Shown here one piece after another: positions 38,650 through 60,560 of a stretch of 64,000 nucleotides of DNA (the first letter of the stretch is position 1; every line of letters starts with the position of its first letter). Location of the stretch: positions 181,437-245,436 of IMG/VR virus record IMGVR_UViG_3300043410_001471. The stretch is one strand, 5' to 3'. A model generated the notes under the pieces. That model saw only the letters and a list, made by a program, of their open reading frames with translations. It ran no database searches and was not told the origin of the DNA. Both the position numbers and the translations under genes were made by a program.

Positions 38650-39498
38650 ATGTTGTTAAGAAAAGGTGATAATAACGAAGATGTAAAAAAATTACAAGCT
38701 AAATTGGGTGTAGAACCTATGGGTAATTTCGGACCAAAAACCGAAGAAGCCGTTAAAGCTTGGCAACTGAAGAATGGTTTAACTCCGGATGGTATTGTAG
38801 GACCGGCAACTTGGGCAAAGATAATGGGAGAATCCATAACTGCACAAGTTTCAAATACACAATCAGTAGCATCAACTCCAGCACCACAAGTTGCAGGATT
38901 AAAATTAGATAAACTTAAAGGACATGTTCCTCAAGTTGTAATAGATTCAATTCCAGAAGTTGCTTCTAAATTTGGTATCAACACTCCATTGAGAGTTGCA
39001 CACTTTTTAGCACAATGTGGACACGAAAGTGGTGGATTCAGAGTAACGCAAGAAAACTTAAACTATTCAGCAAAAGGTTTGAATGGTATATTCAAAAAGT
39101 ATTTCCCAACTGAAGCTGCAGCAGCGGCTTATGCTAGAAATCCACAAAAGATTGCTAACAAAGTTTACTCTAATAGAATGGGTAACGGAACTGAAGCAAG
39201 TGGAGATGGATACAAATTCAGAGGACGTGGTTATATTCAATTGACAGGTAAAGATAACTACACTGCATTTGGTAAATCAATCGGAGTGGATATTCCAAAC
39301 AATCCCGATTTAGTAGCATCTAAATATGCATTAGCATCAGCAGCTTGGTTCTTCTCTAAGAACGGATTACATAAGATGGCAGATGAGGGGGCAAGTGATG
39401 TAGTTGTAACAAAGATTACAAAAAGAGTAAATGGTGGGACAATTGGATTGCCAGATAGAATCAAACACTTCAAAGAATATTATCATTTATTAGCATAA
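38650..39498 (+). CDS. Endolysin: peptidoglycan-binding domain + GH19
   Basis: DGIVGPATW, AHFLAQCGHES, FRGRGYIQLTGKDNY, TKRVNGG. Confidence 0.92.
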   Translation: MLLRKGDNNEDVKKLQAKLGVEPMGNFGPKTEEAVKAWQLKNGLTPDGIVGPATWAKIMGESITAQVSNTQSVASTPAPQVAGLKLDKLKGHVPQVVIDSIPEVASKFGINTPLRVAHFLAQCGHESGGFRVTQENLNYSAKGLNGIFKKYFPTEAAAAAYARNPQKIANKVYSNRMGNGTEASGDGYKFRGRGYIQLTGKDNYTAFGKSIGVDIPNNPDLVASKYALASAAWFFSKNGLHKMADEGASDVVVTKITKRVNGGTIGLPDRIKHFKEYYHLLA

Positions 39499-40369: not shown

Positions 40370-40573
40370 ATGTTAGGACTTAAAATTAGAATAGTATTAA
40401 ATGTATTATTCATCACATCTATCATAGGATTAGCAATATCCTATATCACAATCTTATTACCACAAATACCTGATTTAAACTTTTTAGAATCAGTTGGTTT
40501 ATATTGTATGTTATTACCTGTAAATGAGTTTTTAAAATCTATAATGGAGGGAGATGATGAACAACATAGATAA
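40370..40573 (+). CDS. Small two-helix membrane protein
   Basis: Two hydrophobic stretches; promoter at 40340. Confidence 0.65.
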   Translation: MLGLKIRIVLNVLFITSIIGLAISYITILLPQIPDLNFLESVGLYCMLLPVNEFLKSIMEGDDEQHR

Positions 40574-41624
40574 AAAATATCAGCAATTACTTTCAGATAT
40601 TATTGAATTTGGAGTAGAGAAAGAAGATAGAACCGGAACGGGTACTATTTCATTATTTGGAGAACAAATTCGCCATAAAATGAGTGAAGGGTTTCCCTTA
40701 CTTACTACAAAGAAAATGGCGTGGAAAACAATAGTAACTGAATTGAAGTGGTTTTTACAAGGTGATACCAATATCAAATACCTTGTTGATAACGATTGTC
40801 ACATTTGGGATGGTGATGCATATAAAAACTATTCCGAAACTTGGAATGCAGAAAATCCACCATTCGCCGGTCCTTATACCGATGTTGAACCATTTCTTAC
40901 TAAAGAGGAATTCATTAAAAGAATCAAAGAAGATTCAGATTTTGCAAATACATATGGTGAGTTAGGACCAATCTATGGCGCACAATGGAGAAGATGGACT
41001 TGGGATTTAAACCCAGACCCAATTGACCAAATCCAAAATTTAATCAATGAATTAAAAACAAATCCAGATAGTAGAAGATTGATGGTAAGTGCTTGGAATG
41101 TCGGTGCGTTAGAATCAATGGTACTTCCACCTTGTCATTATGGATTTCAAGTTTATACAAGAGAGTTGAGTTTGAATGAAAGAGGTGAATTGTTTAGAAA
41201 AACATATCCAAACAAATCTGTTGATGACTTCAAACCAAATGGAATGGAAATCCAATCAATGACACACCAATTAGACACAAGATACACTAACGCAAATATC
41301 CCAACCAGAGCAATCTCTTTAATGTGGAATCAACGAAGTGTAGATACATTCTTAGGATTACCATTCAATATCGCATCATATGGATTATTATTGTTAATGA
41401 TTGCAGATGAAGTAAATATGGTTCCTGATGAATTGATTGGTAATTTAGGTGATGTTCATTTGTATAAGAATCACATTGAACAGGCTAAAGAACAAATCAG
41501 TAGAAAACCAATGGAATTACCATCGGTTCATATTATGGATGGCATATATTCATTTATGCCAGGCGATGTCATATTAGAAAATTATAATTCACATCCAACA
41601 ATTAAAGCACCTTTAAGTAATTAA
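40554..41624 (+). CDS. thyA: Thymidylate synthase
   Basis: DRTGTG, LPPCH, QRSVDTFLGLPFNIASY. Confidence 0.97.
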   Translation: MMNNIDKKYQQLLSDIIEFGVEKEDRTGTGTISLFGEQIRHKMSEGFPLLTTKKMAWKTIVTELKWFLQGDTNIKYLVDNDCHIWDGDAYKNYSETWNAENPPFAGPYTDVEPFLTKEEFIKRIKEDSDFANTYGELGPIYGAQWRRWTWDLNPDPIDQIQNLINELKTNPDSRRLMVSAWNVGALESMVLPPCHYGFQVYTRELSLNERGELFRKTYPNKSVDDFKPNGMEIQSMTHQLDTRYTNANIPTRAISLMWNQRSVDTFLGLPFNIASYGLLLLMIADEVNMVPDELIGNLGDVHLYKNHIEQAKEQISRKPMELPSVHIMDGIYSFMPGDVILENYNSHPTIKAPLSN

Positions 41625-41682: not shown

Positions 41683-42333
41683 ATGAAACAGGCGGTATTA
41701 CATTTGAGAAATAATATTTTAGATTACTTAGTACAAGGATTCGCATACTTTGTATGTGTATGGATTGTATTTGCACTATGTTTTCAACTATTCTTTGTTT
41801 ACTTACATTTTTCAGGTAAAGATGTTTTGGCAGGCCAGATATCAAATGAAATAATGTGGAGAATTGATGGTACATTCAAAAATAATCCAAACAACATTAT
41901 GTATAACGCCGAAGACCATATATGGGTTGAATCGGTAACCAATCAGGTTAAAATCGGTAAGTTAGCCGGTAATAGAAATTTAGAATTCGGTTTAAAAAAT
42001 ATATTAGAAGAATTTTTACAAGAGAAGGGATTGGATTTAGCTCCATCTGCAACTCAAAGATTAAAAGTGGACATCATTTATTTAGATGTTCTGACTACAA
42101 AAAAGAATATATCAGTATTCCACTCTAATGAGGAGGAAGTTGTTATCCGTTTAAGAGGTACACTCTATAAGGATGGTAAAAAAGACAAAGAGGTTATGGT
42201 TGAAGAAAGTTCATCTGAAATCTCAATGTCAACTCTCATAGTAGATGAAGGTGGTAAGTTCAACCAAACATCATTGTCAAATGCATTGAAAAAAGGTTGC
42301 GATAAACTTATCACTAAACTACTAGGAAAGTAA
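41683..42333 (+). CDS. Membrane-anchored protein, CsgG-like fold suspected
   Basis: N-terminal TM; C-terminus KFNQTSLSNALKK resembles KFNQSTISIATKK of 48381 ORF. Confidence 0.55.
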   Translation: MKQAVLHLRNNILDYLVQGFAYFVCVWIVFALCFQLFFVYLHFSGKDVLAGQISNEIMWRIDGTFKNNPNNIMYNAEDHIWVESVTNQVKIGKLAGNRNLEFGLKNILEEFLQEKGLDLAPSATQRLKVDIIYLDVLTTKKNISVFHSNEEEVVIRLRGTLYKDGKKDKEVMVEESSSEISMSTLIVDEGGKFNQTSLSNALKKGCDKLITKLLGK

Positions 42334-42334
42334 A

Positions 42335-43987
42335 ATGAAAAAATTAATTATGTTTTTAGGGATACTATTGATATCCTTAACTTCTTATGGACAATTGACA
42401 ATCAGTCAATCTCTATCACCTAACTCAAATTTAAAAGTGGGTGATACTATTACAGTATCTTACAATTTAACCAAAGGACAGGTAATCAAAAATCCTCGTT
42501 ATCTTTGGTTTAGATATCAGTACAATAACAAAGCATTGGCTTATGTATCTACTGCATTTAATCAAGGAACATCTGCACAAACTTTCTACACTGGTTGGAG
42601 TAACTACAAATTTACTTTCAATGGTGGTGCGAGTGATAATGATTTAGATGTTCAGTACGGATTGACCCCTTGGAATTATGCAGTAAACGCAGATTGGAAT
42701 GTTGGACAATTGACAGTTCAAAGAGCAGATGCATCTATTAGTGGTTTAATTGCTACTCAAAAGTATATCTTAAAAGACCAAAACACTTACAACAACATTT
42801 TCAAAATAGATTTAGCAACTGGTACTGATACAACAGGTGCAGCGGTTGGAACAATCTATGGTGGTGGTTGGTCATCATTGGTAGGTGTAAAAGGTAATAC
42901 ATCTCAATTCAAAGTAAAAGTTCTTTATCCACAAGGATACACTATTACTGACCATAGTGTTCAATTAATGAGATTGAAATCGGATGGTAGTGGTATGATT
43001 GATTGGTCACAACAACCTATTGCACAATTACCATTGGATGCAAGTGGTGAAGCACTTTTCACAACACAAGTTAAAGTTGGTGATTCAGTTGGTGTATTTG
43101 TTGGACCTGCATTTCAAAAAAGTTGGATGAATAACATTGTGACCGTATCCGATGCATATAAGGCATTTTTAGGACATGCACAAACTGATATTAGTGGAAC
43201 TGCAAACTTCTTTACATATCCTACATTGGAAAAAAGAGTTGGTAAAATAACCACTAATTCAAATCCATTTGGTGAAGGTGATTCATATGCATTATTTGCA
43301 CATGTAATGGGACAAGATATGACATCAGTATCAATGATTCCAACATCAACATCATCATCTATTAGATGGCAAAGTGGTTTGTTGAATCAAAGTTGGTTAG
43401 ATGGCACACCTACAAGTAGAGTGTTAATTGATTCTCCTATAAAAGAAGTATACGCAGTATATGCTTGGGGTGGTGATTTAAACTGGTCACACTCATCAGA
43501 ACCATCTGCGATTGTAGCTAAAATAAGTGCAGGACAATATACAAATGCAGTAAGTGATAAATCGGTAAATACAATCAAATCTATGAGTACTGCTCCAATG
43601 GCATACCAAACTTTGGCAGTAGAAACGGCTAAATTAAGTGTAACATCTACATTGGAAGGTGGTAAAGTAGTATTAACTACAAATTTAACAAAAGAAGGTT
43701 TAGCAGGTTTACAAGTGATTATGAACTACGATGAATCTAAATTAACATTGGATAATGTGATATTTGATGCAGGAAGTACAATCACAAACTTCTCAACACA
43801 TAAAGATGGTAGATTAACATTTGGTTCTATTGACCAATTGAAAACTGCGAGAATCAAAGTTGGTACTCCATACAAATTAATATTCACACCAAAAACACCA
43901 TTAACAAATACAGCAGGATTATTCTATTTTGTATTATCGGATGCAGTAGATGCTAGTGGTAATAAAATCGACTTAATAGTTGAATAA
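42335..43987 (+). CDS. Secreted beta-rich protein with cohesin-like domain(s)
   Basis: Signal peptide (SYG|Q); GLQVIMNYDESKL cohesin-like strand pattern. Confidence 0.65.
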   Translation: MKKLIMFLGILLISLTSYGQLTISQSLSPNSNLKVGDTITVSYNLTKGQVIKNPRYLWFRYQYNNKALAYVSTAFNQGTSAQTFYTGWSNYKFTFNGGASDNDLDVQYGLTPWNYAVNADWNVGQLTVQRADASISGLIATQKYILKDQNTYNNIFKIDLATGTDTTGAAVGTIYGGGWSSLVGVKGNTSQFKVKVLYPQGYTITDHSVQLMRLKSDGSGMIDWSQQPIAQLPLDASGEALFTTQVKVGDSVGVFVGPAFQKSWMNNIVTVSDAYKAFLGHAQTDISGTANFFTYPTLEKRVGKITTNSNPFGEGDSYALFAHVMGQDMTSVSMIPTSTSSSIRWQSGLLNQSWLDGTPTSRVLIDSPIKEVYAVYAWGGDLNWSHSSEPSAIVAKISAGQYTNAVSDKSVNTIKSMSTAPMAYQTLAVETAKLSVTSTLEGGKVVLTTNLTKEGLAGLQVIMNYDESKLTLDNVIFDAGSTITNFSTHKDGRLTFGSIDQLKTARIKVGTPYKLIFTPKTPLTNTAGLFYFVLSDAVDASGNKIDLIVE

Positions 43988-43988
43988 T

Positions 43989-46283
43989 ATGAAACACTTA
44001 TTAGTTACATTATTCTTATTCATATCATTTTTAGGGTTCGGACAGAGTGTATCTGCTCCGGACTCTAAATCGTTTATACCATCCACAACTGCACAAGATG
44101 CAAGTGGATTTGTATTGAGTGGATTCAATTCTACATCAACTCTATTAGCATCAATCAGTTTAGTAGAATACCCATCAGGTACTACATTCTATCTAACTAC
44201 CACAACAGGTTTAACTGCGGCAAGTGGATTTACATTGTCGGGAAATAAAACTCGATTAGTTGTAACGGGAACGATGGCTAATATCAATACGGCATTGGCA
44301 TCCCTAAAAGTAAATACTGGTTCGGTAGTAGGAAATGTTAAATTATCAGTAGCAGCAACAGTCAATCCAATCGGTTACTATTATAATGGTGTAAACGGAC
44401 ACTTTTACAAACCTGTATATCCTGGAACAACTTATACTAATGCAAGAGCAATATCTTTAACAACAACATTCAAAGGACAACAGGGATATTTGGTAACAAT
44501 TACATCAGCTTCGGAAGATGCTTTTATTCAAGCCAATGTTCCTCAAACCAATATATGGTTCGCCGCAACGGATGAAGTAATAGATGGAACTTGGGTAATA
44601 GATGCTGGTCCTGAAAAGGGAACTGTAATGAAAACAAGGAATGGTAATCTTAATGGAAACATTCCAGGTGTATATAACAACTGGGCAAGTGGTGAACCAA
44701 ATGGTAGTAATCATACTGAGGATTATGCGGTAACAAAATGGAATGGTAATTTATGGAACGATTTAAATAACAATTGGAATAATGCGTATGTAATTGAATA
44801 TGGAACTTGGAGTAATCCAGATGACCAAACATTTACCGAATTTTATACCAATTCAGTAAATCACTCAAATGGCTCAGTATTAAGAACTCAATTTAATTTT
44901 GATTTTGGTGGGAATGTAGATGAAACTAAATTCTCAGCAAAAGCAAACACTTATGTAAATAATGTATGGGGAACAACAAATTCAACTGCAAGAGCATTAA
45001 GTGGGTTAGGTAAAGTTGATATTACAAGTGATTTGGATACTGTTAAAATAAGTGGTAATGGTGTAAAAGCATCAACAACTGCTGGATATGCTGAATGGTG
45101 TGTAATATACGAATATGAAGTAACAAACCAAAGATATAGAGTTGGAATCGATAGTAGAGAGGTTACAGGTATTTTATCTGACCCATCAACAATCAGTAGT
45201 TTACAATTATTTGATTTATGGAATGGACCAGTTACCTATGGTAGTTATGACTCGAATGGTTGGACAGAGGTTTATATCTATACCACAACACCATTGAATT
45301 TCGCTGGTTCATCTTATACATCTAATATTAGAAATGGTGGTTCATATTATGCATTAACTGCAGAATTTACATTTTCACCAATTCAAAGTTACAAACAACA
45401 TGGAATTGAAATTGTTGCGAATTCACAAACTGAATTAAACACTTTATATACGAATATTGTAACAGTATCAGATGTTTATTTAGCATTTAAAGAATTATCG
45501 AATGGTGGTATATTGGGAAACCAAAGTGGATTGGAATTTGGAAATGGTATCCAATATATGAATGCGGATGTGGATGGTAATGGTTCATTTAATGAAGCAG
45601 ATACTTACAAACTATTACAACATTTGAGTGGGATTGCACCACTAACACAATATTCAGCATTAACTTATTTGATGAAATTATATAACAAATCAGATTATGA
45701 TGTAATAACAAAATCAAATTGGAATACACAATTAAATTCAACAAGAAGTTTGATTCCATTTAATTTGAACACTGGTGCATTGAATAACACTTACAATATA
45801 AATGTAACATGGGTAGGTGATGTAAACCTTTCACATTCAGCACAACAAACCCAAAGTAGTGTTGCAACTAATTCAATTAGAACTATGAGTTTGACAACTA
45901 ATTCGGTTTCAAATATCATAAACGCAGAATTGATGGGCGAAAATGTGGGTGGTAAGTTAGTTGTAACAATTACATTAGACCCGTTACAACAAGAAGTGGT
46001 TGGAACTCAATTTAATTTGAATTATGATAATACTGCTCTTAAATTTGAAAAAGTAGATTTTGTAACAAAGGGTAATCCTACCAATTTTGGAACTGATAAG
46101 GGAACATCTATAATATTTGGTTCTTTAATTACGGATGGTTCAACTACATTGGATAAAACGACTCAATACAAAATAACATTTGCACCACTAATGATGCTAG
46201 GTGATAATTTGGGATTAACATCTATATCACTAACTGATGCGGTTAATAAGAATGGTACACAATTAAAAGTAAAGTTAAACTAA
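43989..46283 (+). CDS. Secreted protein: C-type lectin + dockerin/EF-hand-like + cohesin-like domains
   Basis: Signal peptide (GFG|Q); YLVTITS..WF..W..YNNWASGEPN..WNDL lectin motif; DVDGNGSFNEAD; GTQFNLNYD. Confidence 0.75.
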   Translation: MKHLLVTLFLFISFLGFGQSVSAPDSKSFIPSTTAQDASGFVLSGFNSTSTLLASISLVEYPSGTTFYLTTTTGLTAASGFTLSGNKTRLVVTGTMANINTALASLKVNTGSVVGNVKLSVAATVNPIGYYYNGVNGHFYKPVYPGTTYTNARAISLTTTFKGQQGYLVTITSASEDAFIQANVPQTNIWFAATDEVIDGTWVIDAGPEKGTVMKTRNGNLNGNIPGVYNNWASGEPNGSNHTEDYAVTKWNGNLWNDLNNNWNNAYVIEYGTWSNPDDQTFTEFYTNSVNHSNGSVLRTQFNFDFGGNVDETKFSAKANTYVNNVWGTTNSTARALSGLGKVDITSDLDTVKISGNGVKASTTAGYAEWCVIYEYEVTNQRYRVGIDSREVTGILSDPSTISSLQLFDLWNGPVTYGSYDSNGWTEVYIYTTTPLNFAGSSYTSNIRNGGSYYALTAEFTFSPIQSYKQHGIEIVANSQTELNTLYTNIVTVSDVYLAFKELSNGGILGNQSGLEFGNGIQYMNADVDGNGSFNEADTYKLLQHLSGIAPLTQYSALTYLMKLYNKSDYDVITKSNWNTQLNSTRSLIPFNLNTGALNNTYNINVTWVGDVNLSHSAQQTQSSVATNSIRTMSLTTNSVSNIINAELMGENVGGKLVVTITLDPLQQEVVGTQFNLNYDNTALKFEKVDFVTKGNPTNFGTDKGTSIIFGSLITDGSTTLDKTTQYKITFAPLMMLGDNLGLTSISLTDAVNKNGTQLKVKLN

Positions 46284-46624
46284 TGAAGAAGATAATATTA
46301 ATATCGTTAATTTTGTTAGTAGGATGTACTAAACCAGAATTACCAACACCAGTATTGCCTGTTGAAAAAATATTTAATGCAACTGAAAGTTCAGTAACAA
46401 ATGGACAATCTATACACTTTGATTTACCATCGGTAGGAGTGTATACATTAACTTTAATAGATAAAGAAAGTGGGCAAGTTGTAAGTAGAGAAAGATTTAA
46501 TGGTATAAGTGGTGAAAATGTAAAAAAGATTTATACGAAATCATTACAAAGTAGATATTTATATTTGTTATTGGAAGATGTTACTAAAAAAGAATTAGGT
46601 AAAACAACAATAATAATAAACTAA
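46283..46624 (+). CDS. Lipoprotein with T9SS-CTD-like Ig domain
   Basis: Lipobox LLVG|C; C-terminal ~70-aa beta-sandwich pattern. Confidence 0.6.
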   Translation: MKKIILISLILLVGCTKPELPTPVLPVEKIFNATESSVTNGQSIHFDLPSVGVYTLTLIDKESGQVVSRERFNGISGENVKKIYTKSLQSRYLYLLLEDVTKKELGKTTIIIN

Positions 46625-46993
46625 ATGAAAAAATTAATTTTAACATTTGCGATAGCAGCTTTATTGGTAGGATGTAGTAAAGAAGATATCATCCCAACAC
46701 CTCAATCGGTATCGGAAGATTTGAAGATTGCAAGTTCGGTGGGTATCAAAGTACAATCACACTTTGTAACATCGGAAGTTGCAATGAATGTAAAAACTGA
46801 AACTGCTCAATCAGTAACGATTAAAATATTCGATATTGGAAATAGAGTAGTATCAAAAGAAACAATGAATGTAGTAGCAGGTGATAATGTACTTAAAGTA
46901 TATACATCAGCATTACCATCATCTGCATATAGAATAGGATTATTCGATGCAAGTGGTAGACAATTAGGAATAACAGATTTTAACAAATTATAA
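46625..46993 (+). CDS. Lipoprotein with T9SS type-A sorting-domain-like C-terminus
   Basis: Lipobox LLVG|C-SKED; IKIFDIGNRVV..G.N..LPSSAY. Confidence 0.7.
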   Translation: MKKLILTFAIAALLVGCSKEDIIPTPQSVSEDLKIASSVGIKVQSHFVTSEVAMNVKTETAQSVTIKIFDIGNRVVSKETMNVVAGDNVLKVYTSALPSSAYRIGLFDASGRQLGITDFNKL

Positions 46994-47006
46994 AAAACAA
47001 TTTACA

Positions 47007-47327
47007 ATGGCAGAAGAACAAGAAGAAAAAGGTGGTACTTCAATTAAAAGTATCTTAATCGGTTTAGTGAGTACTATCACATTAGGAGTTGGTGGTTTCA
47101 TTACAAACAAATTAACAGGTGGTGAAGAAGAAAAACCTGCAGTACAACAAGCTGCACCTGTTATCAATATTCAAAACACTCAAAATCAATCTCAATCGGC
47201 AGGTGGTAAGACTGTAATCATTAAAGAGAAAGCAGTTGGTGGTGGAAATGCTCAACCAGCACAACCTCAACCAAAGCCTAAGAAGAAAGAAGGCGATGAG
47301 TTCAAAGAAGAAGCACCAAAGTGGTAA
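47007..47327 (+). CDS. Single-TM protein with Gln/Pro-rich tail
   Basis: Hydrophobic segment at residues ~14-33. Confidence 0.7.
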   Translation: MAEEQEEKGGTSIKSILIGLVSTITLGVGGFITNKLTGGEEEKPAVQQAAPVINIQNTQNQSQSAGGKTVIIKEKAVGGGNAQPAQPQPKPKKKEGDEFKEEAPKW

Positions 47328-47416
47328 TTTATAAATTAGGCGTAGTTGTAGTTATGTTAATGTTATTAGCAAGTGCAATCTATGTAGGATTAAAACAACA
47401 AAAAGAAAATGAGTAA
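47321..47416 (+). CDS. 31-aa single-TM microprotein, absent from the ORF track
   Basis: GTG start; VIYKLGVVVVMLMLLASAIYVGLKQQKENE; overlaps both neighbours. Confidence 0.45.
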   Translation: MVIYKLGVVVVMLMLLASAIYVGLKQQKENE

Positions 47417-48014
47417 TCAACAACCGCCAAGCGGATTTAAGGATTTATTAAATTCAATGATGTCCAGAAGATGGTACATCACTGCGTTAGTATTGGGTTC
47501 ATTCATATTAATCATCGGAGGTATTTTCGGTGCAATTACATCGAATACGGCAGCATCGGCAGAATGGAAAGAACTTCTATTATTAATGTTGGGTGCTTTC
47601 ATTGGTTCTTATGGTAAAATCATTGACTATTGGTTTAGTGATACCGATAAGGATAAAATGTTAGTTCAGAAAATGGATGAAGAAGATGGTACATCGTTAA
47701 GTAATACGGCGGATATGCCAGATACTCCAATCGTTCCTATGAGTGTAGCACCATTAGTATTACCAAATACCGAAGAATCAGTAGTATCACTACCAAAAAC
47801 TGAAGAAAAACAAACCGAAAAGAAAGGTGTTGAAATTGATGAAGATGGCGATGGCGTAATGGATGGTTTAGATTTCGATGGTGATGGTAAGATTGATGAA
47901 TACTTCGCACATAGACAATGTGAGCATGTATGGGGAGATTTGGATGGCGATGGTGAAGAAGAATGTTTAAAATGTGGTAAAATCAGAGATGATGATGCCG
48001 AAATGGTAGGATAA
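47409..48014 (+). CDS. Two-TM protein with DxDGDG (Ca-binding-like) repeats
   Basis: Two TM helices; DEDGDG, DFDGDG, DLDGDG; CEH..CLKC. Confidence 0.7.
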   Translation: MSNQQPPSGFKDLLNSMMSRRWYITALVLGSFILIIGGIFGAITSNTAASAEWKELLLLMLGAFIGSYGKIIDYWFSDTDKDKMLVQKMDEEDGTSLSNTADMPDTPIVPMSVAPLVLPNTEESVVSLPKTEEKQTEKKGVEIDEDGDGVMDGLDFDGDGKIDEYFAHRQCEHVWGDLDGDGEEECLKCGKIRDDDAEMVG

Positions 48015-48051
48015 ATAGGTTACATAGTATTAACAATTTAAATGTAAAACT

Positions 48052-48309
48052 ATGACTTTTAAAGAATGGGTAATTGATTTATTCAAAGATGAAAGAGGAG
48101 CAATATCAGTAAAACCTGTAATTGCATTCGTTGGAGCATTATTCTTATGTGGAACAATGTTAGTGAACTCTTTCTCACATGGTGATATCAAACCAGCAGC
48201 AGAATTGGTAAACGCAGTAATGGTAATCACAGCAATCGGAATGGGAGCTGATACATTAGATAAGTTTACACATAAAAAGAGTGAACCTAAAGAAGAAGAA
48301 TTAGGATAA
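48052..48309 (+). CDS. Small two-TM membrane protein (holin-like)
   Basis: Two hydrophobic helices, charged C-terminus. Confidence 0.6.
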   Translation: MTFKEWVIDLFKDERGAISVKPVIAFVGALFLCGTMLVNSFSHGDIKPAAELVNAVMVITAIGMGADTLDKFTHKKSEPKEEELG

Positions 48310-48318
48310 TAATTGAAA

Positions 48319-48346
48319 AGGGAGAACATAGTTTCTCCCTTTTTTT
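48319..48346 (+). terminator. Rho-independent terminator
   Basis: AGGGAGAA/TTCTCCCT stem + T-run. Confidence 0.8.
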
Positions 48347-48380
48347 ATACTTATACATAAACGAACAAACTCATTTATGT

Positions 48381-49103
48381 ATGAAAAATTTATTAGTATT
48401 ATTAAGTTTCTTTTTGTTAAGCAGTGTTGCGGGTGTTGCTCAAACAATAGGAAGCACTAAAACAGAGCAGTACAAAGCATCCTTCGAAACAAAATCGGAC
48501 ATTAGTCAATTTTTAAATTATGAAGGAAAGCAAATTCCGATTCAAATCCTTAAATGTGGTATTGGTGATGAAGTTTATGACCAATATCCGGAGCTCAAGG
48601 AAAAGAGAGTTGGTTTGGGTGTGGCTAATATCACGCTTGAATATTTGGATAATCTTAACCGATTTACATTTACGGAAGATAAAACTGAAATTAAAAACAG
48701 AATGGTTAAGCAGTTTCAGGCATCTCAAGCAGGCATTTCGGAAGATAAATTGGATGGTAGAGGAAAAATCCGTTTAGCACATTACTTTGTTGAAATAGAA
48801 GTATATGACTATTCCGTTTCCGAAGATGAAACAATCAATTTAAAAGATGGTATCAAAGATAATATGGTAACTCGTTTAGGTTTACAGGTTAGATTCACAA
48901 ACGCAGAGAATGGTACTATTATCGCAGCATCTGGTTTAGGTGAAGCAACTACAAAAAGAGAATTAACTCTATTATCAGATGCAACTATTGACCCTATAAA
49001 ATTCAACCAATCAACTATTAGTATTGCAACAAAGAAAGCATTGGATATCGCTTGTGCAAATATATTAGGTAAAATGGTTAAAAAGGGAGTATTTGAAAAA
49101 TAA
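48381..49103 (+). CDS. CsgG/HfaB-family protein
   Basis: Signal peptide (GVA|Q); LGLQVRFTNAENGTII..SGLGEA CsgG-like strand. Confidence 0.65.
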   Translation: MKNLLVLLSFFLLSSVAGVAQTIGSTKTEQYKASFETKSDISQFLNYEGKQIPIQILKCGIGDEVYDQYPELKEKRVGLGVANITLEYLDNLNRFTFTEDKTEIKNRMVKQFQASQAGISEDKLDGRGKIRLAHYFVEIEVYDYSVSEDETINLKDGIKDNMVTRLGLQVRFTNAENGTIIAASGLGEATTKRELTLLSDATIDPIKFNQSTISIATKKALDIACANILGKMVKKGVFEK

Positions 49104-49108
49104 TTATT

Positions 49109-49327
49109 ATGAAATATATTACATTCCTTATATTCTTATTTTTAGTTAGTTGTACGCCTGTTAGAAAAGTAAATGTTTATAGCAAACACAATTATTATCA
49201 AAGACATAGAACCAACACATATACATCTCCAACTTGGATTCCAGGTAGAGGTATCATATTGGAAACACATATACATAAGTTACCCAAAAGAAGTTACGCC
49301 CCTAAAGTTAGAAGAGGAAGGCATTAA
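49109..49327 (+). CDS. Small basic lipoprotein
   Basis: Lipobox FLVS|C. Confidence 0.65.
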   Translation: MKYITFLIFLFLVSCTPVRKVNVYSKHNYYQRHRTNTYTSPTWIPGRGIILETHIHKLPKRSYAPKVRRGRH

Positions 49328-50868
49328 TGAAAAAATGGTTAGTAAGTTTATCAATAATGGTTATGTTCATATTTGCTCAAGAAGCGAAAGGGCAAACCTA
49401 TACCCAAACATTCGTAGATAAATGTAGTGGACAAATCAAAACGGCAACAACTACTATGGTTAATGGTAACGCCGTTGTTTCCTTTTATGACCAAGTTAAA
49501 GTATTTACTCCATTGGAAGTACAAAGTGGAGCAGTTAAACTTTGGTTAAACGCAACATATTTAGCATATTCAACAATGGGTTGTCCTACTAACATAGTAG
49601 TTCAGCAAACAGTCCAACAAACTGTAAATAACGCAGTATCACAGGCAGCATCATCTGCGGCAACTCAAGCGGCTAGTGCGGCAGCAAGTTCAGCAGCTTC
49701 ATCAGCTGCGAGTTCAGCCGCATCAACTGCAGCAAGTTCAGCCGCAAGTTCGGCGGCATCTTCATCGGCATCTACGGCAGCAAGTAATAGTGCAAGTTCA
49801 GCGGCATCATCATCCGCTAGTTCTGCATCATCAACTGCGGCAAGTAGTGGTGCAACGGCATCTACATCATCAACTGCTTCAACTCCACCACCAGCAAGTA
49901 GTAGTTCATCATCTACGAATTCATCGAGTAGCAGTTCATCGAATAATAGTAATTCATCATCATCTTCATCCGAAACTAAATCGGAAAGTAGTAGTTCATC
50001 ATCATCTTCATCTGAATCAAAATCAGAGACTAAATCGGAAACAAAGAGTGAATCTAAATCCGAATCAAAATCTGAAAGTAAGAGTGAGGAAAAGAAAGAG
50101 GAATCTAAATCAGAATCTAAAAAGGAAGAGAAAAAAGAAGAATCTAAAAAAGAAGAAAAGAAAGAGGAGAAGAAGGAAGAGAAAAAAGAGGAAAAGAAAC
50201 AAAAGGCTCAAAATATGAATCCGTTGTTAATAGCATCGGATTTAACAACCGCTGAAGACCAGGATGGTACATACAATGCAATCGCATCGGTAGGTATTAG
50301 TAGAAGTTCAATGGCTGGAGATGTAACCTATTCCCTAAACTCTATGATATGGAGTTCATTAGACCAATTCGCATTAAGTAGTGGTATAACTAAAATGAAC
50401 TTTGAAGGTGGTAAGTTATCATCTATCAATTCATACTCATTGACATCGGCATATCTTAAAGGTAGTTGGATGGGATTGATGGGGTATACCTATATCAAAC
50501 CACATCCTAAATTGGGAGTATATGGATACAATGTGGGAGCAGTGATGTTAATGATGCCAGGTAGTAAACAAAAATGGGATGTATCCCTATCTACATCGGC
50601 AGTAGCATTTTGGACCAAACCATTTCAGTATAGTAAGAAATTAACACTTTCACCGCAAGTATTCGCAATGTATTCTCCAATTGGATATAATACATTTACC
50701 GGAAATACTGCAGTAGGTAGACACTTTGGATTTTTGGTAGGTTCTTCGGTTGATTATAAAATCAGTAGAAGATTTGGATTCTCATTTAACTATAAGTTGA
50801 ATATGAATACACAACCTGGTCAGAAATTTACAAGTAACTTTTTGATTGGAACAAGAATGATGCTTTAA
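49327..50868 (+). CDS. Secreted protein with Ser/Ala and Glu/Lys low-complexity stalk and beta-barrel-like C-terminus
   Basis: Signal peptide (AKG|Q); ASSAA and KKEE repeats; amphipathic beta-strands in the last ~210 aa. Confidence 0.75.
   Translation: MKKWLVSLSIMVMFIFAQEAKGQTYTQTFVDKCSGQIKTATTTMVNGNAVVSFYDQVKVFTPLEVQSGAVKLWLNATYLAYSTMGCPTNIVVQQTVQQTVNNAVSQAASSAATQAASAAASSAASSAASSAASTAASSAASSAASSSASTAASNSASSAASSSASSASSTAASSGATASTSSTASTPPPASSSSSSTNSSSSSSSNNSNSSSSSSETKSESSSSSSSSSESKSETKSETKSESKSESKSESKSEEKKEESKSESKKEEKKEESKKEEKKEEKKEEKKEEKKQKAQNMNPLLIASDLTTAEDQDGTYNAIASVGISRSSMAGDVTYSLNSMIWSSLDQFALSSGITKMNFEGGKLSSINSYSLTSAYLKGSWMGLMGYTYIKPHPKLGVYGYNVGAVMLMMPGSKQKWDVSLSTSAVAFWTKPFQYSKKLTLSPQVFAMYSPIGYNTFTGNTAVGRHFGFLVGSSVDYKISRRFGFSFNYKLNMNTQPGQKFTSNFLIGTRMML
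49640..50200 (+). repeat. Coding low-complexity tandem repeats (ASSAA / SES(K) / KKEE)
   Basis: Degenerate codon-level repeats inside the 49327 ORF. Confidence 0.85.
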
Positions 50869-54465: not shown

Positions 54466-54839
54466 GGGGATGCCCGGTATTGACAGGTATGAAGTGTTAG
54501 TACAATTGATGCAAGCAGGATTAGATGGAAATCCTTAAACACCTATCGAACAATAAACGCAGTAGAATTATCTACAATGACCTTCGAAGATGCTATGGCA
54601 TTCGTTGGTGCTGATTTAGCAGTAGCTGCCTAATCTCTCCCGCACACATCGTGGGACTTGAAATAGAATGTGAACCCAGGTGGATACCAATTGAACCCGA
54701 AATCGAATTGGAAACATTAATGATAACGAATGTATAAATCTTTATCTATTTTGTCAGTTAAGAAAAACTGACTAAGCTTGTGAATGAGGTTTATTAAACC
54801 ATATTTTGGACGAGGGTTCGACTCCCTCCATCTCCACCA
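54466..54839 (+). ncRNA. ssrA: tmRNA; predicted tag (A)AVELSTMTFEDAMAFVGADLAVAA*
   Basis: GGGGATG/CATCTCC-ACCA acceptor with G3.U70, TTGAC after the 5' end, GGGTTCGACTCCC T-arm, tag ORF 54559-54633 ending AVAA. Confidence 0.93.
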
Positions 54840-58270: not shown

Positions 58271-58341
58271 CGTGGGGTAGTGTAACGGTAGCATATTGGG
58301 CTCATAACCCTAAGACGGAGGTTCGAATCCTCCCCCCGCAA
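58271..58341 (+). tRNA. tRNA-fMet(CAT)
   Basis: C1.A72 mismatch, GGG/CCC anticodon stem, cloverleaf. Confidence 0.92.
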
Positions 58342-58967
58342 CTAAAGTAAAAAAATTTACAAATAAATTAGGAAATGTGAAAATGTTTTCGTATATTTGT
58401 AAAACAAAATGAGATAGTGGTTGAAGCCAACATCTAATAAAACCGAATGTGTGAACATCTTTCCAACATATTAGCGGAGGGGTTAAAAAGCCGGATATCA
58501 CTAATTCATTTTGAAAAATATAATAATTGTGGGAGAGTAGACTAATTGTAAATAAGACGCCCGTAAAATGTACAACATTTCAATTATTATTACAAATAAT
58601 TTGGAAGTTTGAAAAAACTTTCGTATATTTGTAAAGTTGTTCAGAAGTAGGAAGTATATATGGTGTAAGTAAACATAGCTGAAAATGTTCAACAAAAAAA
58701 ATTAAAATAAATTTGAAAGTTTATTTGGAATTGTGAAAAAAAAGTATTATCTTTACATAGTAAATGAGAAACTTATAGGCGATGAAAGATACTCGGTATT
58801 CAAATTTATAAAAAAATAATTGTAAAAATATTAGGAAGTTTGGAAAAGTTTTCGTATCTTTACAAAGTAATCAGAAATCGTAAAAACATACCTGAAGTAA
58901 GAGTAACAAAGTTTACTATACCAAATGGTTGAAATCTGATTACAAAAAATGTTCTTTAAAATACTGA

Positions 58968-59837
58968 AAAGATTATACATAGTAGATTCGTTCTACATAG
59001 TATAACAACGGCCGCCTATGGTCGTGAAATAAACTACGAAAGTAGGATAAAGTGGGTACATTGGTTAATGTAACTGCGGCTACTCCCCCGTAAGGGAGCA
59101 AGCTTGAGTAGGCAAGTGAGATATCATTCTGACTTTGTAGGTGGGGGTAACACTATCATCGAAGAGCCGGAATGACTGGGCAAATGTAGATTGTTCAGTT
59201 GAGATGGGAACATCAATAAGAATAACTCATAGAATTATTGTGAAAAGTAAGGACTTAATCTCTCCTTATTATTGCGTGATTCAATACAAAAGTGGTCTTG
59301 AGAATCAAGCTATCCGAAAGGACGTGAGATAAGATAATGTACGAGTGGTGTCGTTATTATCCTTTAGACTGGGACACCAATCCCTTCTATTGAAGATGAC
59401 TTGAAGTATGGTGATAGGGATATCACATTGAGTAGTATAGTATTCTGTTGTTCAAAAGATAACGGAGCTGGTGGCAAACCACTACTCGAATCCATCTACA
59501 AACCAAAACTCATTTGCATTTTGACGCAAAATCATAAATCAAGTAAGCAAAAGTGTTTGCCAGTTTCAGATGAAAGGTGTGTACATAGTAGGGAGTTGTT
59601 CCTTGCCACGATACCTCCGCAAGAGGTCTGTGATTCTTTTGAAAGGTTTCTAGCATCGCAAGTGTGAATCAGCTCGGCAGGGTTGAAGAAAATAAGTAGG
59701 AAGAGAGTAATCTGAAACTCTAAGAGTGGTTGGCTATACTAACCCACATTGAATTGGTACATCTCAAAAGGGTGTGGAAAAGAAAGGAAACAATAATCTT
59801 TCGAAAGCTGGTTCACAAAAAGGAGTATTCTCATCCT
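58968..59837 (+). ncRNA. Large structured ncRNA, GOLLD-like (boundaries approximate)
   Basis: ~870 nt, GC-richer than flanks, no convincing ORF, many short hairpins (CTAC-GAAA-GTAG 59034, CTCCC..GGGAG 59083, ACCTC-CGCAA-GAGGT 59613), directly upstream of the tRNA array. Confidence 0.7.
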
Positions 59838-59844
59838 TATATAA

Positions 59845-59915
59845 GCGAGATTAGTGTAACGGTAGCACAGCAGCCGTCCAGGTTGCAAGATGGGGTTCAA
59901 TTCCTTGGTTTCGCT
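59845..59915 (+). tRNA. Atypical tRNA-Gly(TCC), G33, weak T-stem
   Basis: GCGAGAT/GTTTCGC-T acceptor; anticodon loop CG-TCC-AG. Confidence 0.65.
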
Positions 59916-60131
59916 CTTCGTAGTGGTTTACGGCAGATAGGTTGGGTGTATCTCTCCAATAACTGGAAATCCACTTTAAAAAAAATGACAAATAGTGTGA
60001 AGATATGGTTTTCGTAGGGGATTTTCGCCTTAAACAATCTCAACCAATACGAATTAGTGTTGATGGTAAAAGCGGCTGTAGCTAGGCCTTTGAAAGTACC
60101 ACCCTACAAATCTTTCTTTTATAGCTTATAA

Positions 60132-60202
60132 GCGGTGGAAGTGTAATGTTTGCACACCTAGCGTCCAGCTAGGGGGAGGTGGTTCGAATCCACACCACCG
60201 CT
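60132..60202 (+). tRNA. Atypical tRNA-Gly(TCC), G33
   Basis: Perfect GCGGTGG/CCACCGC-T acceptor; CCTAG/CTAGG stem; loop CG-TCC-AG. Confidence 0.75.
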
Positions 60203-60326
60203 CAATTAACTAATTTATTGAGGATGATAATAACCGGTGCATGACACGACGTGGCGTATTTTGAAGATGAATTAGTTTATTTTATAAAAAAATAACTTTT
60301 AATAAATTTTTACATATATATTAACA

Positions 60327-60485
60327 ATGAAAACTCTTAACATACATACAAATTGTTCATTAGCGGCTCAAAGAAATGAGTGGCAAGGGCTTGGTATGTT
60401 TAGTACGATAGCAAATCCGGCAGTCTTGAATTTAGGCAAGGTGGATTATATTGGAAAAAAGTTAAGGGACACTGATGTAGGATAG
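60327..60485 (+). CDS. 52-aa possible leader peptide
   Basis: MKTLNIHTNCSLAAQRNEWQGLGMFSTIANPAVLNLGKVDYIGKKLRDTDVG, followed by a terminator. Confidence 0.45.
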   Translation: MKTLNIHTNCSLAAQRNEWQGLGMFSTIANPAVLNLGKVDYIGKKLRDTDVG

Positions 60486-60517
60486 TAGTGTAAGATTTAG
60501 ATAAAAGATATTTAAAG

Positions 60518-60556
60518 AACCCCTTAACTAATTAAAAAAAGTTAAGGGGTTTTTTG
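60518..60556 (+). terminator. Rho-independent terminator immediately before tRNA-Asn
   Basis: AACCCCTTAAC/GTTAAGGGGTT 11-bp stem + T-run. Confidence 0.85.
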
Positions 60557-60560
60557 TTTT

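What the first reader, a model, noticed from the sequence alone, without database searches (positions are those of the whole stretch)
42335..46283. Two adjacent secreted paralogues share a TVSD...GDxNxSHS + cohesin-like C-terminal module
Seen: 42335 has IVTVSDAYKAF / WGGDLNWSHS / GGKVVLT..GLQVIMNYD, and 43989 has IVTVSDVYLAF / WVGDVNLSHS / GGKLVVT..GTQFNLNYD plus a DVDGNGSFNEAD dockerin/EF-hand-like loop. Their N-terminal parts differ, and only 43989 has the lectin. Inference: a conserved interaction or polymerisation module (cohesin-dockerin-like) carrying variable heads, i.e. a cellulosome-like or filament assembly encoded by a phage.
Basis: partly seen in the sequence, partly recalled or inferred. 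Interest (0 to 1): 0.62.

Follow-up and report, generated by a model that had tools for sequence, protein, structure and literature searches.

The report
Phage-encoded cohesin-dockerin lectin proteins
Two neighbouring genes of a 245-kb freshwater phage of Bacteroidota encode exported proteins that end in the same dockerin-like plus cohesin unit, one carrying a sugar-binding lectin and the other a second cohesin, so the phage probably assembles a sugar-binding protein complex in its host's envelope.

Summary
The last ~285 residues of the two adjacent ORFs are homologous (26% identity, E 3e-18). This unit is a dockerin-like subdomain, a flexible linker and a true cohesin fold (AF2 pLDDT 90.7; Z 14.6 to solved cohesins). 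ORF2 carries a C-type lectin with an intact EPN/WND calcium and sugar site. ORF1's different head is itself a second cohesin plus an Ig-like domain. Both proteins have Bacteroidota-type signal peptides.

The module defines a phage family of 217 clusters at 50% identity. It is always C-terminal, and the heads are swapped among C-type lectin, PA14/GLEYA and LCCL. Related phage proteins and giant Bacteroidota surface proteins carry dockerin-cohesin followed by a T9SS sorting domain. These two proteins lack that domain, but each module gene is accompanied by one small lipoprotein whose domain resembles a T9SS sorting domain (hhalign 81%, E 1e-5).

"Cellulosome" (no enzymes) and "filament" are not shown. 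Binding in trans has only weak in-silico support.

Most likely these are exported glycan-binding complexes tethered in the host envelope. What they do there is inferred, not shown. This is a new variant of non-cellulosomal cohesin-dockerin systems.

The parts
42335..43987 (+). Gene P1 (550 aa): signal peptide, N-terminal cohesin, Ig-like domain, dockerin-like subdomain, linker, C-terminal cohesin
   Evidence: ORF list and translation. More than 3300 clusters at 90% identity hold orthologues in metagenomes.
42335..42391 (+). P1 signal peptide (residues 1-19; the mature protein begins with Gln)
   Evidence: Read directly from the sequence. The same pattern occurs in 77 of 81 family representatives.
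42392..42892 (+). P1 N-terminal cohesin (residues 20-186)
   Evidence: AF2 model of residues 20-262, pLDDT 92.8. VIA-align Z 13.7, rmsd 2.2 A over 130 residues to 6kgc_A, and the top 19 rows are all cohesins. Foldseek best hit is 2w1n, 7e-8. Profile against PDB: 1g1k cohesin, E 0.007.
42899..43120 (+). P1 Ig-like / FN3-like beta-sandwich (residues 189-262)
   Evidence: All-beta in the model. The best Foldseek hit is a cohesin+FN3 double module. A language-model lead points to CarboxypepD_reg-like. This domain was not searched on its own.
43130..43495 (+). P1 dockerin-like subdomain (residues 266-387). The second calcium loop is degenerate (43247-43282). It ends in GDLNWSHS (43472-43495).
   Evidence: Alignments A1 and A3. 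No Dockerin_1 hit was found for P1 itself.
43613..43984 (+). P1 C-terminal cohesin (residues 427-550)
   Evidence: Homologous to the P2 cohesin. Pfam Cohesin 20.8 bits, below the 24.1 cut-off.
43989..46283 (+). Gene P2 (764 aa from the ATG at 43989, one base after the P1 stop): signal peptide, N-domain, C-type lectin, middle domain, dockerin-like subdomain, linker, cohesin
   Evidence: The database copy P0003 starts at this ATG. More than 2400 clusters at 90% identity hold orthologues.
44403..44804 (+). P2 C-type lectin domain (residues about 142-275), with EPN at 44694-44702 and WND at 44754-44762
   Evidence: Pfam Lectin_C 26.6 bits against 22.6. It aligns to the calcium/sugar site of CD23 and mannose-binding protein. 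EPN...WND is kept in 116 of 120 orthologues.
44814..45425 (+). P2 middle domain (residues 279-482). It is shared by all lectin-bearing family members and its fold is unknown.
   Evidence: jackhmmer among the family representatives. A profile search found no PDB hit.
45450..45839 (+). P2 dockerin-like subdomain (residues 491-620): helix of repeat 1 (45456-45488), canonical calcium loop plus helix of repeat 2 (45567-45602 onward), beta extension, and the near-invariant GDVNLSHS (45816-45839)
   Evidence: Profile A3 hits solved dockerins at E 5e-4. Pfam Dockerin_1 scores 15.5-16.4 bits, below the 22.9 cut-off, but it hits 24 of 81 family members.
45840..45908 (+). P2 low-confidence linker rich in Ser, Thr and Gln
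   Evidence: pLDDT is below 50 at model residues 152-160.
45909..46280 (+). P2 C-terminal cohesin (residues 644-767)
   Evidence: AF2 pLDDT 90.7. All of the Foldseek top 50 are cohesins, E 2e-7. VIA-align Z 14.6, rmsd 2.1 A over 122 residues. Pfam Cohesin 24.9 bits, and 29.1 bits in the genome search, above the 24.1 cut-off.
46283..46993 (+). Two paralogous small lipoproteins (113 and 122 aa) whose beta-sandwich domain resembles a T9SS sorting domain. One such lipoprotein accompanies each module protein.
   Evidence: A lipobox Cys is invariant. Sub-threshold Pfam hits: DUF3244 in 22 of 45 members and Por_Secre_tail in 14 of 45. hhalign against 30 bacterial T9SS sorting domains: probability 81%, E 1.2e-5. 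One-to-one pairing is seen in distant phages.
41683..42333 (+). Upstream membrane protein (216 aa), the first gene of the conserved envelope cassette
   Evidence: It sits directly upstream of the module gene in all fully flanked loci and in the distant phage L086, E 1.6e-66.
47007..50868 (+). Rest of the conserved envelope cassette: single-pass membrane protein, two-pass membrane protein with Asp-rich loops, small membrane protein, secreted 240-aa protein, and a Ser-rich secreted protein whose C-terminus looks like a beta-barrel
   Evidence: Synteny across 80 IMG/VR loci and in L086 and L103.

Best explanation
P1 and P2 are Sec-exported, non-enzymatic modular proteins of a jumbo phage that infects a freshwater member of the Bacteroidota. 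Each ends in a unit of about 285 residues, inherited from the same stock as the 'dockerin - cohesin - T9SS sorting domain' tail of giant Bacteroidota surface proteins. Here that tail lacks the sorting domain.

The unit works as a protein-protein docking device. The calcium-type dockerin-like subdomain packs on a cohesin, either its own or that of the neighbouring paralogue. P1 offers one further free cohesin. P2 contributes a calcium-dependent C-type lectin of the mannose/GlcNAc type (EPN).

The resulting multivalent lectin complex is most likely held at the outer membrane by the two small lipoproteins encoded next to it, whose domain resembles a T9SS sorting domain. There is one such lipoprotein per module protein. 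The complex binds glycans of the host envelope during infection. The most plausible purpose is to mask or remodel the cell surface, that is, to exclude further phages or to stop released progeny from sticking to debris.

Shown here: homology of the modules, the folds, the lectin motifs, the signal peptides, the synteny, the relatives with a fused sorting domain, and the swapping of heads.

Inferred: export, contact in trans, anchoring by the lipoproteins, the glycan target and the biological purpose.
For: - Module homology: E 3e-18.
- Cohesin fold: Z 14.6, rmsd 2.1 A over 122 residues, and all of the Foldseek top 50 are cohesins.
- Dockerin-like half: profile hits to solved dockerins at E 5e-4 and to cohesins at E 1.3e-7. 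Dockerin_1 is the only recurrent Pfam hit, in 24 of 81 members. Loop 2 has the canonical form D-x-N-x-D-G-x-F-D-x-x-D in most members.
- One compact unit: pTM 0.88 despite a disordered linker.
- P1 head is a second cohesin: Z 13.7.
- Lectin: Pfam hit above its cut-off, with EPN/WND kept in 116 of 120 orthologues.
- Heads of the family: PA14 in 17, GLEYA in 12, Lectin_C in 5 and LCCL in 1 of 73 members.
- Signal peptides in 77 of 81 representatives.
- The cassette order is kept in 80 IMG/VR loci and in distant phages.
- One lipoprotein per module gene, and the lipoproteins resemble T9SS sorting domains (hhalign 81%, E 1.2e-5).
- Phage relatives have Doc-Coh-Por_Secre_tail, and bacterial relatives have Dockerin_1-Cohesin-TIGR04183.
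- Trans test of the P2 dockerin-like part against the P1 C-terminal cohesin: weak support. Score 0.54, best of 3 controls 0.02. The mark was reached by 58 of 80 solved complexes and 2 of 110 mismatched pairs, but at 0.60 or under by only 7 of those 80 and by both mismatches that passed. The runs agree in at least 94% of contacts and the partner's pLDDT is 71-73.
Against: - There is no experimental or expression evidence. No RNA run holds the stretch.
- P1 and P2 have no recognisable route across the outer membrane: no T9SS sorting domain. They may therefore stay in the periplasm.
- The dockerin-like part is below Pfam's cut-off in P2 and undetected in P1, whose calcium loop 2 is lost.
- Its fold was not tested on its own, because cohesin matches filled the fold-search lists.
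- The compact monomer model is equally consistent with a closed contact in cis and no assembly.
- The complex score is weak, and because cohesin-dockerin complexes are solved it may reflect the model's memory of them.
- The lipoprotein link rests on gene order and a moderate profile match.
- The purpose (masking, exclusion) has no direct evidence.
Confidence: 0.5

Rival explanations
1. Closed stalk. The dockerin-like subdomain binds only its own cohesin within the chain, so the module is a rigid, inert spacer or stability unit at the base of a lectin. There is no pairing between the paralogues and no higher assembly.
For: The AF2 monomer model gives one compact unit (pTM 0.88) with a linker of about 24 residues, long enough for contact in cis. 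The same dockerin-cohesin tandem sits next to the sorting domain in single bacterial proteins. Distant phages can carry just one module protein.
Against: P1 carries an extra N-terminal cohesin with no partner in cis. P1 and P2 are adjacent in all 80 related loci. Some Bacteroidota proteins end in the dockerin-like domain alone, without a cohesin, as true dockerin-bearing subunits do. The trans test gave weak support.
Confidence: 0.3
2. Periplasmic role tied to lysis. The proteins stay in the periplasm and bind peptidoglycan or O-glycosylated envelope proteins through their lectin heads, as accessory parts of the lysis or envelope-disruption cassette.
For: No outer-membrane export signal was found. 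An EPN-type lectin can bind GlcNAc (established knowledge of C-type lectins). In some relatives the GH19 endolysin gene lies inside the cassette (L015, L017 and L062). Membrane proteins and lipoproteins flank the genes.
Against: Lysis proteins are not known to need interchangeable lectin heads. Relatives with a fused T9SS sorting domain point to the cell surface as the family's destination. The lipoproteins have an acidic motif after the Cys that resembles the Bacteroidota surface-export signal (this consensus is recalled from memory).
Confidence: 0.15
3. T9SS-secreted surface adhesins, like their relatives. P1 and P2 cross the outer membrane through the host's type IX system and are displayed on the surface.
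For: Structural neighbours in phages carry Por_Secre_tail in 72-98% of cluster members. The best BFVD hit is named as a secretion-system sorting-domain protein. Bacterial homologues pass the TIGR04183 cut-off.
Against: Tested and not met for these two proteins. There is no TIGR04183 or PF18962 hit at E up to 1. The terminal cohesin is unrelated to sorting domains (hhalign probability 0.4%). No such domain occurs anywhere in the phage genome.
Confidence: 0.1
4. Virion proteins. They are lectin-type receptor-binding or decoration proteins of the phage particle, and the cohesin-like folds are merely Ig-like virion domains.
For: Lectin, Ig-like and beta-sandwich domains are common on phage particles. 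P1 has a faint, non-significant match to the TP901-1 baseplate protein ORF48 (E 0.16).
Against: Cleavable-type signal peptides are conserved across the family. There is no PHROG hit of any kind. The genes are embedded among lipoprotein and membrane-protein genes, not among structural genes.
Confidence: 0.05

Closest known systems
Dockerin - cohesin - T9SS type A sorting domain tails of giant Bacteroidota surface proteins (found here: L098 5453-9547 minus strand, 1365 aa; L099 4487-8917 minus strand, 1477 aa)
   Same: The order and spacing of Dockerin_1 then Cohesin are the same. The motif GD[IV]N[GN]S follows the dockerin. A CarboxypepD_reg-like or Ig-like domain precedes it, as in P1. The family profile matches at E 2e-11 to 3e-11.
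   Different: The bacterial proteins are 1300-4700 aa and end in a T9SS sorting domain that passes the TIGR04183 cut-off. P1 and P2 are short and phage-encoded, carry lectin or cohesin heads, and end with the cohesin. As far as I could find, the function of the bacterial tandem is itself undescribed.
Phage protein clusters with Cohesin, Dockerin_1 and Por_Secre_tail (ESM Atlas rows 7, 9 and 10; BFVD A0A6J5M064 from an uncultured Caudovirales phage)
   Same: The predicted structure aligns over 250-260 of the 288 module residues (TM by query 0.74-0.76; BFVD E 9e-13). All members are viral.
   Different: Those proteins carry a T9SS sorting domain after the module. Here that domain is missing from the protein, and a similar domain sits on separate lipoproteins next door.
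Non-cellulosomal cohesin-dockerin pairs of Clostridium perfringens glycoside hydrolases (NagH/NagJ type; PDB 2o4e, 2ozn, 2jh2, 2w1n, 2vo8)
   Same: Cohesin and dockerin are used outside a cellulosome to join secreted carbohydrate-directed proteins. These cohesins are among the best structural matches.
   Different: Those are enzymes of a Gram-positive bacterium, with dockerin and cohesin on separate chains. Here the proteins are lectins of a phage of a Gram-negative host, with both modules on one chain.
Cellulosomal adaptor scaffoldins that carry cohesins and a dockerin in one chain (for example ScaA and ScaB of Acetivibrio cellulolyticus; PDB 3l8q, 4ums, 5nrk)
   Same: There are several cohesins plus one dockerin per chain (P1 has 2 cohesins and 1 dockerin-like part). 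They are the best profile hit (3l8q, E 1.3e-7) and fold hits at Z about 14.
   Different: No CAZyme subunits, no CBM and no S-layer-homology anchor are present. The first calcium loop of the dockerin is incomplete at the N-terminus. The host is Bacteroidota, not Clostridia.

Membership tests
Cohesin (Pfam PF00963; cohesin fold) | Nine-stranded beta-sandwich that superposes on solved cohesins | tested here: met
   P2 644-767: Z 14.6, rmsd 2.1 A over 122 residues to 6kgc_A. The top 15 VIA-align rows and the top 38 Foldseek rows are all cohesins. P1 20-186: Z 13.7, rmsd 2.2 A over 130 residues.
Cohesin (Pfam PF00963; cohesin fold) | Score above the Pfam gathering cut-off (24.1 bits) | tested here: met
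   P2 scores 24.9 bits, and 29.1 bits in the genome search. The P1 C-terminal cohesin scores only 20.8 and 14.6 bits, below the cut-off. At E up to 0.001, 30 of 73 family members match, best 3.3e-10.
Cohesin (Pfam PF00963; cohesin fold) | Binds a dockerin | tested here: inconclusive
   In silico only: weak support, score 0.54 against a best control of 0.02. This lies in the band where 7 of 80 solved complexes and both passing mismatches (of 110 mismatched pairs) fall.
Type I dockerin (Pfam PF00404) | Two repeats of about 22 residues, each a 12-residue calcium loop followed by a helix | tested here: inconclusive
   Repeat 2 of P2 is canonical (DVDGNGSFNEAD plus helix). Repeat 1 keeps only loop positions 5-12 (D-D-I-V-T-V-S-D). 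In P1, loop 2 is degenerate. The near-invariant GDxNxS at the end of the subdomain may supply the missing half of loop 1. That is an inference and is untested.
Type I dockerin (Pfam PF00404) | Score above the Pfam gathering cut-off (22.9 bits) | tested here: not met
   P2 scores 15.5-16.4 bits and P1 has no hit. At family level, 24 of 81 members match at E up to 0.1, best 5e-5. The bacterial homologue in L099 passes with 24.6 bits. Profile A3 hits solved dockerins at E 5e-4.
Type I dockerin (Pfam PF00404) | Calcium-dependent folding and cohesin binding | not testable with these tools
   Needs purified protein tested with calcium and with EDTA.
Cellulosome | Dockerin-bearing carbohydrate-active enzymes assembled on a multi-cohesin scaffoldin that has a CBM or a cell anchor | tested here: not met
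   No catalytic domain or CBM was found in P1, P2 or 73 family members. The heads are Lectin_C, PA14, GLEYA, LCCL or cohesin.
T9SS cargo (type A C-terminal sorting domain, TIGR04183 / PF18962) | Sorting domain at the extreme C-terminus | tested here: not met
   No hit at E up to 1 in P1 or P2. The terminal cohesin compared with 30 sorting domains gives hhalign probability 0.4%. None occurs anywhere in the phage genome. The feature is met in related phage clusters and in bacterial homologues.
C-type lectin domain (Pfam PF00059), P2 only | Pfam gathering cut-off, and the calcium site 2 / sugar ligands (EPN, Glu, WND) | tested here: met
   26.6 bits against a cut-off of 22.6. E239-P-N241, E247 and W259-N-D261 are spaced as in mannose-binding protein. 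The motif is kept in 116 of 120 orthologues. Sugar binding itself is not testable here.
Phage structural or receptor-binding proteins (PHROGs) | Match to any PHROG of the tail, baseplate or head categories | tested here: not met
   No PHROG matches at E up to 0.1. No tblastn hit was found in 50,697 deposited phage records.

The most novel reading that the evidence does not exclude
The phage builds a 'lectinosome' outside the cytoplasm. Lectin subunits (P2-type, with interchangeable C-type, PA14/GLEYA or LCCL heads) and a two-cohesin adaptor (P1-type) assemble through a circularly permuted, calcium-dependent dockerin and cohesins. The assembly is tethered by dedicated lipoproteins that are split-off versions of the T9SS sorting domain. 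It plugs into, or mimics, the host's own T9SS-displayed dockerin-cohesin surface proteins. In this way the phage re-programmes or masks the glycan surface of the infected cell.
Probability: 0.15. Interest if true: 0.8.

Novelty: new variant of a known kind. Interest (0 to 1): 0.55.

Why it matters
Cohesin-dockerin pairs are the textbook glue of cellulosomes. Outside cellulosomes their roles are mostly unknown, and I found no paper describing them in phages.

Here they define a large protein family that appears confined to phages. It is abundant in lake metagenomes: thousands of clusters at 90% identity, on contigs of 200-340 kb. The family combines exported lectins with a docking module borrowed from the host phylum's surface proteins.

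If the model holds, it gives three things:
- A concrete, testable example of a phage remodelling the surface of a Bacteroidota cell with its own secreted protein complex.
- A natural set of orthogonal cohesin-dockerin pairs and lectin heads for protein engineering.
- A hint at what the undescribed dockerin-cohesin tandem in front of T9SS sorting domains does in the bacteria themselves.

Tried and rejected
- NCBIfam and PHROGs gave nothing for P1 or P2.
- megablast and tblastn against deposited phage genomes gave no match.
- A pattern scan of 185,579 species genomes found only a 3.4-kb contig binned into a Schleiferiaceae MAG from Lake Mendota. It carries the same P1-P2 pair, so it is most likely phage DNA in the bin and not evidence of a bacterial gene.
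- The P2 middle domain (279-482) has no PDB relative by profile search.
- The idea that the terminal cohesin is a disguised T9SS sorting domain was rejected (hhalign probability 0.4%).
- The faint P1 match to the TP901-1 baseplate protein (E 0.16) was treated as noise.
- The 'moraphage' paper on aquatic Bacteroidota jumbo phages mentions none of these genes. Whether this phage belongs to that lineage was not tested.
- The preprint on envelope proteins of huge phages does not mention cohesin, dockerin or lectins.
- No RNA run holds the region, so read laying was not used and expression is unknown.
I therefore could not check which cohesin face the dockerin-like part touches, or whether GDxNxS lies next to the first helix's V-T-x-x-D.
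- No other genetic code was needed.

Full report
**Setting**

The window is the last 64 kb (181437-245436) of a 245,436-bp IMG/VR virus record bounded by direct terminal repeats, with an estimated completeness of 100%. All long ORFs lie on the + strand, and G+C is about 31%. The window encodes:
- a family B DNA polymerase, a GroEL-type chaperonin, a radical-SAM protein and two glycosyltransferases;
- a GH19 endolysin with a peptidoglycan-binding domain, at 38650-39498;
- a ThyA-like ORF at 40554-41624, judged from reading;
- an array of 23 tRNA genes at 58271-63881.

Runs that hold the stretch are freshwater and aquatic metagenomes. One orthologue is named after a Sediminibacterium MAG. The only hit in 185,579 species genomes is a 3.4-kb contig in a Schleiferiaceae MAG from Lake Mendota. 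The host is therefore most likely a freshwater member of the Bacteroidota. The signal peptides, which end in small-residue/Gln, agree with this (the 'Q-rule' of Bacteroidota signal peptidase I substrates, from my own knowledge).

**The observation**

Both ORFs and every quoted motif are present. The true start of the second gene is the ATG at 43989, one base after the stop of the first. The database copy and all orthologues begin there.

BLASTP aligns P1 267-547 with P2 492-764 at 26% identity, E 3e-18. With 12 orthologues of each paralogue, 44 columns are invariant between the two families. The phage genome holds only these two copies.

**What the shared module is**

- *Sequence profiles.* A profile of 81 diverse members (A3) hits solved cohesins with its second half (3l8q, E 1.3e-7). 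It hits solved dockerins with positions 41-81 (8ajy, 6kg9 and others, E about 5e-4).
- *Predicted structure.* AlphaFold2 on this alignment gives pLDDT 90.7 and pTM 0.88. Only residues 152-160, in the linker, are disordered.
- *Second half is a cohesin.* Model residues 165-288 (P2 644-767) superpose on type I cohesins at Z 14.6, rmsd 2.1 A over 122 residues. The top 15 entries of an unbiased scan of 48,161 chains, and the top 38 Foldseek rows, are cohesins.
- *First half is dockerin-like.* It is helical with a small beta extension. Pfam Dockerin_1 is the only family that recurs on it (24 of 81 members at E up to 0.1, best 5e-5). P2 itself stays below the cut-off at 15.5-16.4 bits against 22.9.
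- *Calcium loops.* Column statistics show a canonical EF-hand-type loop and helix in repeat 2. Repeat 1 retains only loop positions 5-12. P1 and its close orthologues have lost loop 2.
- *The GD motif.* The subdomain ends in the near-invariant G-D-[VL]-[ND]-x-S-H-S. Bacterial homologues keep GD[IV]N[GN]S at the same place.
- *My inference, untested.* This terminal segment supplies positions 1, 3 and 5 of the first calcium loop. That would make the domain a circularly permuted dockerin closed by a shared calcium site.

I could not search the fold of the first half alone.

**The heads**

P2 carries a C-type lectin domain (Pfam 26.6 bits against 22.6). It has E239-P-N, E247 and W259-N-D spaced as in mannose-binding protein, and the motif is conserved in 116 of 120 orthologues. 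By established knowledge of C-type lectins, EPN/WND predicts calcium-dependent binding of sugars of the mannose, GlcNAc, glucose or fucose type.

P1's head is not an unrelated domain. Residues 20-186 are a second cohesin (pLDDT 92.8; Z 13.7, rmsd 2.2 A over 130 residues; profile hit 1g1k, E 0.007). They are followed by an Ig-like or FN3-like sandwich.

P1 is therefore cohesin - Ig-like - dockerin-like - cohesin. P2 is N-domain - lectin - middle domain - dockerin-like - cohesin.

**The family**

An exhaustive profile search of 1.84 billion cluster representatives found only 217 clusters at E up to 0.001. In every full-length member the module is at the C-terminus. In one distant subgroup, 12-15 further residues follow it. 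77 of 81 full-length members show a signal peptide.

There are two architectures:
- P1-type: about 500-600 aa, with an N-terminal cohesin head.
- P2-type: about 640-880 aa, with the shared middle domain preceded by interchangeable heads. Of 73 members scanned, PA14 occurs in 17, GLEYA in 12, Lectin_C in 5 and LCCL in 1.

All ten nearest cluster sets in the ESM Atlas by shape are 100% viral.

**Relatives with a sorting domain**

- Three of those viral cluster sets (546-633 aa) align over 250-260 of the 288 residues. They carry Por_Secre_tail in 72-98% of members, together with Cohesin and Dockerin_1.
- The best BFVD match (E 9e-13, TM by query 0.69) is a protein of an uncultured Caudovirales phage named after that sorting domain.
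- In a sample of 401 Bacteroidota genomes, 38 have weak matches (E 1e-4 to 2e-11) inside open frames that are mostly 500 to 4700 aa long.
- Two of these that I examined read '... Dockerin_1 - Cohesin - TIGR04183', with the sorting domain above its cut-off. One has a CarboxypepD_reg-like domain just before the dockerin, as in P1.
- A third, a subtilase with RTX repeats, simply ends in the dockerin-like domain.

P1 and P2 have no sorting domain. Their cohesin is unrelated to sorting domains (hhalign probability 0.4%). The phage genome has none at all.

**Context**

In all 80 related IMG/VR loci the order is: membrane protein (41683), P1, P2, then 0-2 kb of optional genes, then two small lipoproteins, then membrane and secreted proteins. 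The optional genes encode secreted proteins that end in an aromatic residue, like outer-membrane barrels.

A phage whose module protein is barely recognisable (E 1e-10) keeps the neighbours almost unchanged (E 4.5e-108, 5e-80 and 1.6e-66). The module protein is therefore the fast-evolving member of a conserved envelope cassette.

The number of small lipoproteins follows the number of module genes:
- two and two in the window;
- one and one in L084, L085 and L086;
- in L103, the P1-type and P2-type genes lie 4.5 kb apart and each is directly followed by its own lipoprotein.

These lipoproteins are paralogues with an invariant lipobox Cys, followed in one family by [ST]-K-[DE]-[DE]. That resembles the Bacteroidota lipoprotein surface-export signal, as I recall it from the literature. 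Their domain matches T9SS type A sorting domains profile-to-profile (probability 81%, E 1.2e-5, sorting-domain positions 12-69 of 73). Pfam hits are sub-threshold: DUF3244 in 22 of 45 and Por_Secre_tail in 14 of 45.

Taken with the fused relatives, this is a fusion/fission argument that a module protein and its lipoprotein act together.

**Do the modules bind in trans?**

I made one test: the P2 dockerin-like part against the P1 C-terminal cohesin, each supplied with its 81-row alignment. The verdict was weak support.
- Score 0.54 (runs 0.57, 0.51, 0.54), best of 3 controls 0.02.
- The mark was reached by 58 of 80 solved complexes and 2 of 110 mismatched pairs.
- At 0.60 or under it was reached by only 7 of those 80, and by both mismatches that passed.
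- The runs agree in at least 94% of contacts, and the partner's pLDDT is 71-73.
- My own alignments were used, so these counts hold only roughly.
- Cohesin-dockerin complexes are solved, so the pass may reflect likeness to them rather than binding.

The test cannot separate contact in cis from contact in trans.

**Verdict**

The structural reading (cohesin plus dockerin-like, modular, phage-encoded, secreted) is well supported. 'Cellulosome' and 'filament' are not shown.

The most likely mechanism is an exported, lipoprotein-tethered, multivalent lectin complex that acts on the host envelope. Its purpose is inferred only. I found no description of such phage proteins in the searched literature.

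I file it as a new variant of non-cellulosomal cohesin-dockerin systems, of moderate to good interest.

Noticed in passing
window 46283-46993: Two paralogous small lipoproteins whose single domain resembles a T9SS type A sorting domain without its first strand (hhalign probability 81%, E 1.2e-5). One accompanies each module gene in every phage examined. The motif after the Cys, [ST]-K-[DE]-[DE], resembles a surface-export signal.
   Followed up: yes
window 41683-50868; L086 197-6637; L103 1-8999: A conserved cassette of envelope proteins: membrane proteins, lipoproteins and secreted proteins. It is kept in gene order across distant jumbo phages and is much better conserved than the module proteins inside it.
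   Followed up: partly
L009 8858-9625; L011 9160-10053; L013 8858-9751; L066 10050-10814: Relatives carry one or two extra genes between P2 and the lipoproteins. These encode 255-297-aa secreted proteins that end in ...NF[QKN]F, as outer-membrane beta-barrels do. This window lacks them.
   Followed up: no
window 47409-48014: A membrane protein with two Asp-rich loops of D-x-D-G-D-G type, followed by a Cys-x2-Cys pair. The region looks like calcium-binding loops plus a zinc ribbon, but Dockerin_1 did not match it. It is highly conserved (E 5e-80 in L086).
   Followed up: no
window 49327-50868: A secreted protein with a long low-complexity stretch rich in Ser, Ala and Lys/Glu. Its C-terminal half looks like a beta-barrel, and homologues sit in the same cassette elsewhere.
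   Followed up: no
window 38650-39498; L015, L017 and L062 around 9606: The endolysin (peptidoglycan-binding domain plus GH19) lies 3 kb upstream here. In some relatives it sits inside the cassette, between the lipoproteins and the membrane proteins, which hints at a link between the cassette and lysis.
   Followed up: no
window 58271-63881 and 54466-54839: An array of 23 tRNA genes at the genome end explains the rise in G+C to 0.40-0.42 there. ARAGORN also calls a tmRNA-like gene at 54466-54839.
   Followed up: no
L003 (JBIPMA010000251.1, 3368 bp): A contig carrying the same P1-P2 pair (67-77% identity) is binned in a Schleiferiaceae MAG from Lake Mendota. It is probably phage DNA in the bin and at most a weak hint to the host.
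   Followed up: partly
L100 4657-9609 (minus strand); genomes G055, G327, G391, G375, G279: Some Bacteroidota genomes hold 5-6 large proteins each with the dockerin-like domain, some at the extreme C-terminus without a cohesin (for example a subtilase with RTX repeats). This suggests undescribed non-cellulosomal cohesin-dockerin systems in these bacteria.
   Followed up: partly
G000:C1:125544-125615 (outside the window): A second sub-threshold Dockerin_1 match (16.4 bits) lies in a 104-aa ORF elsewhere in the phage genome. It is a possible further partner for the cohesins.
   Followed up: no
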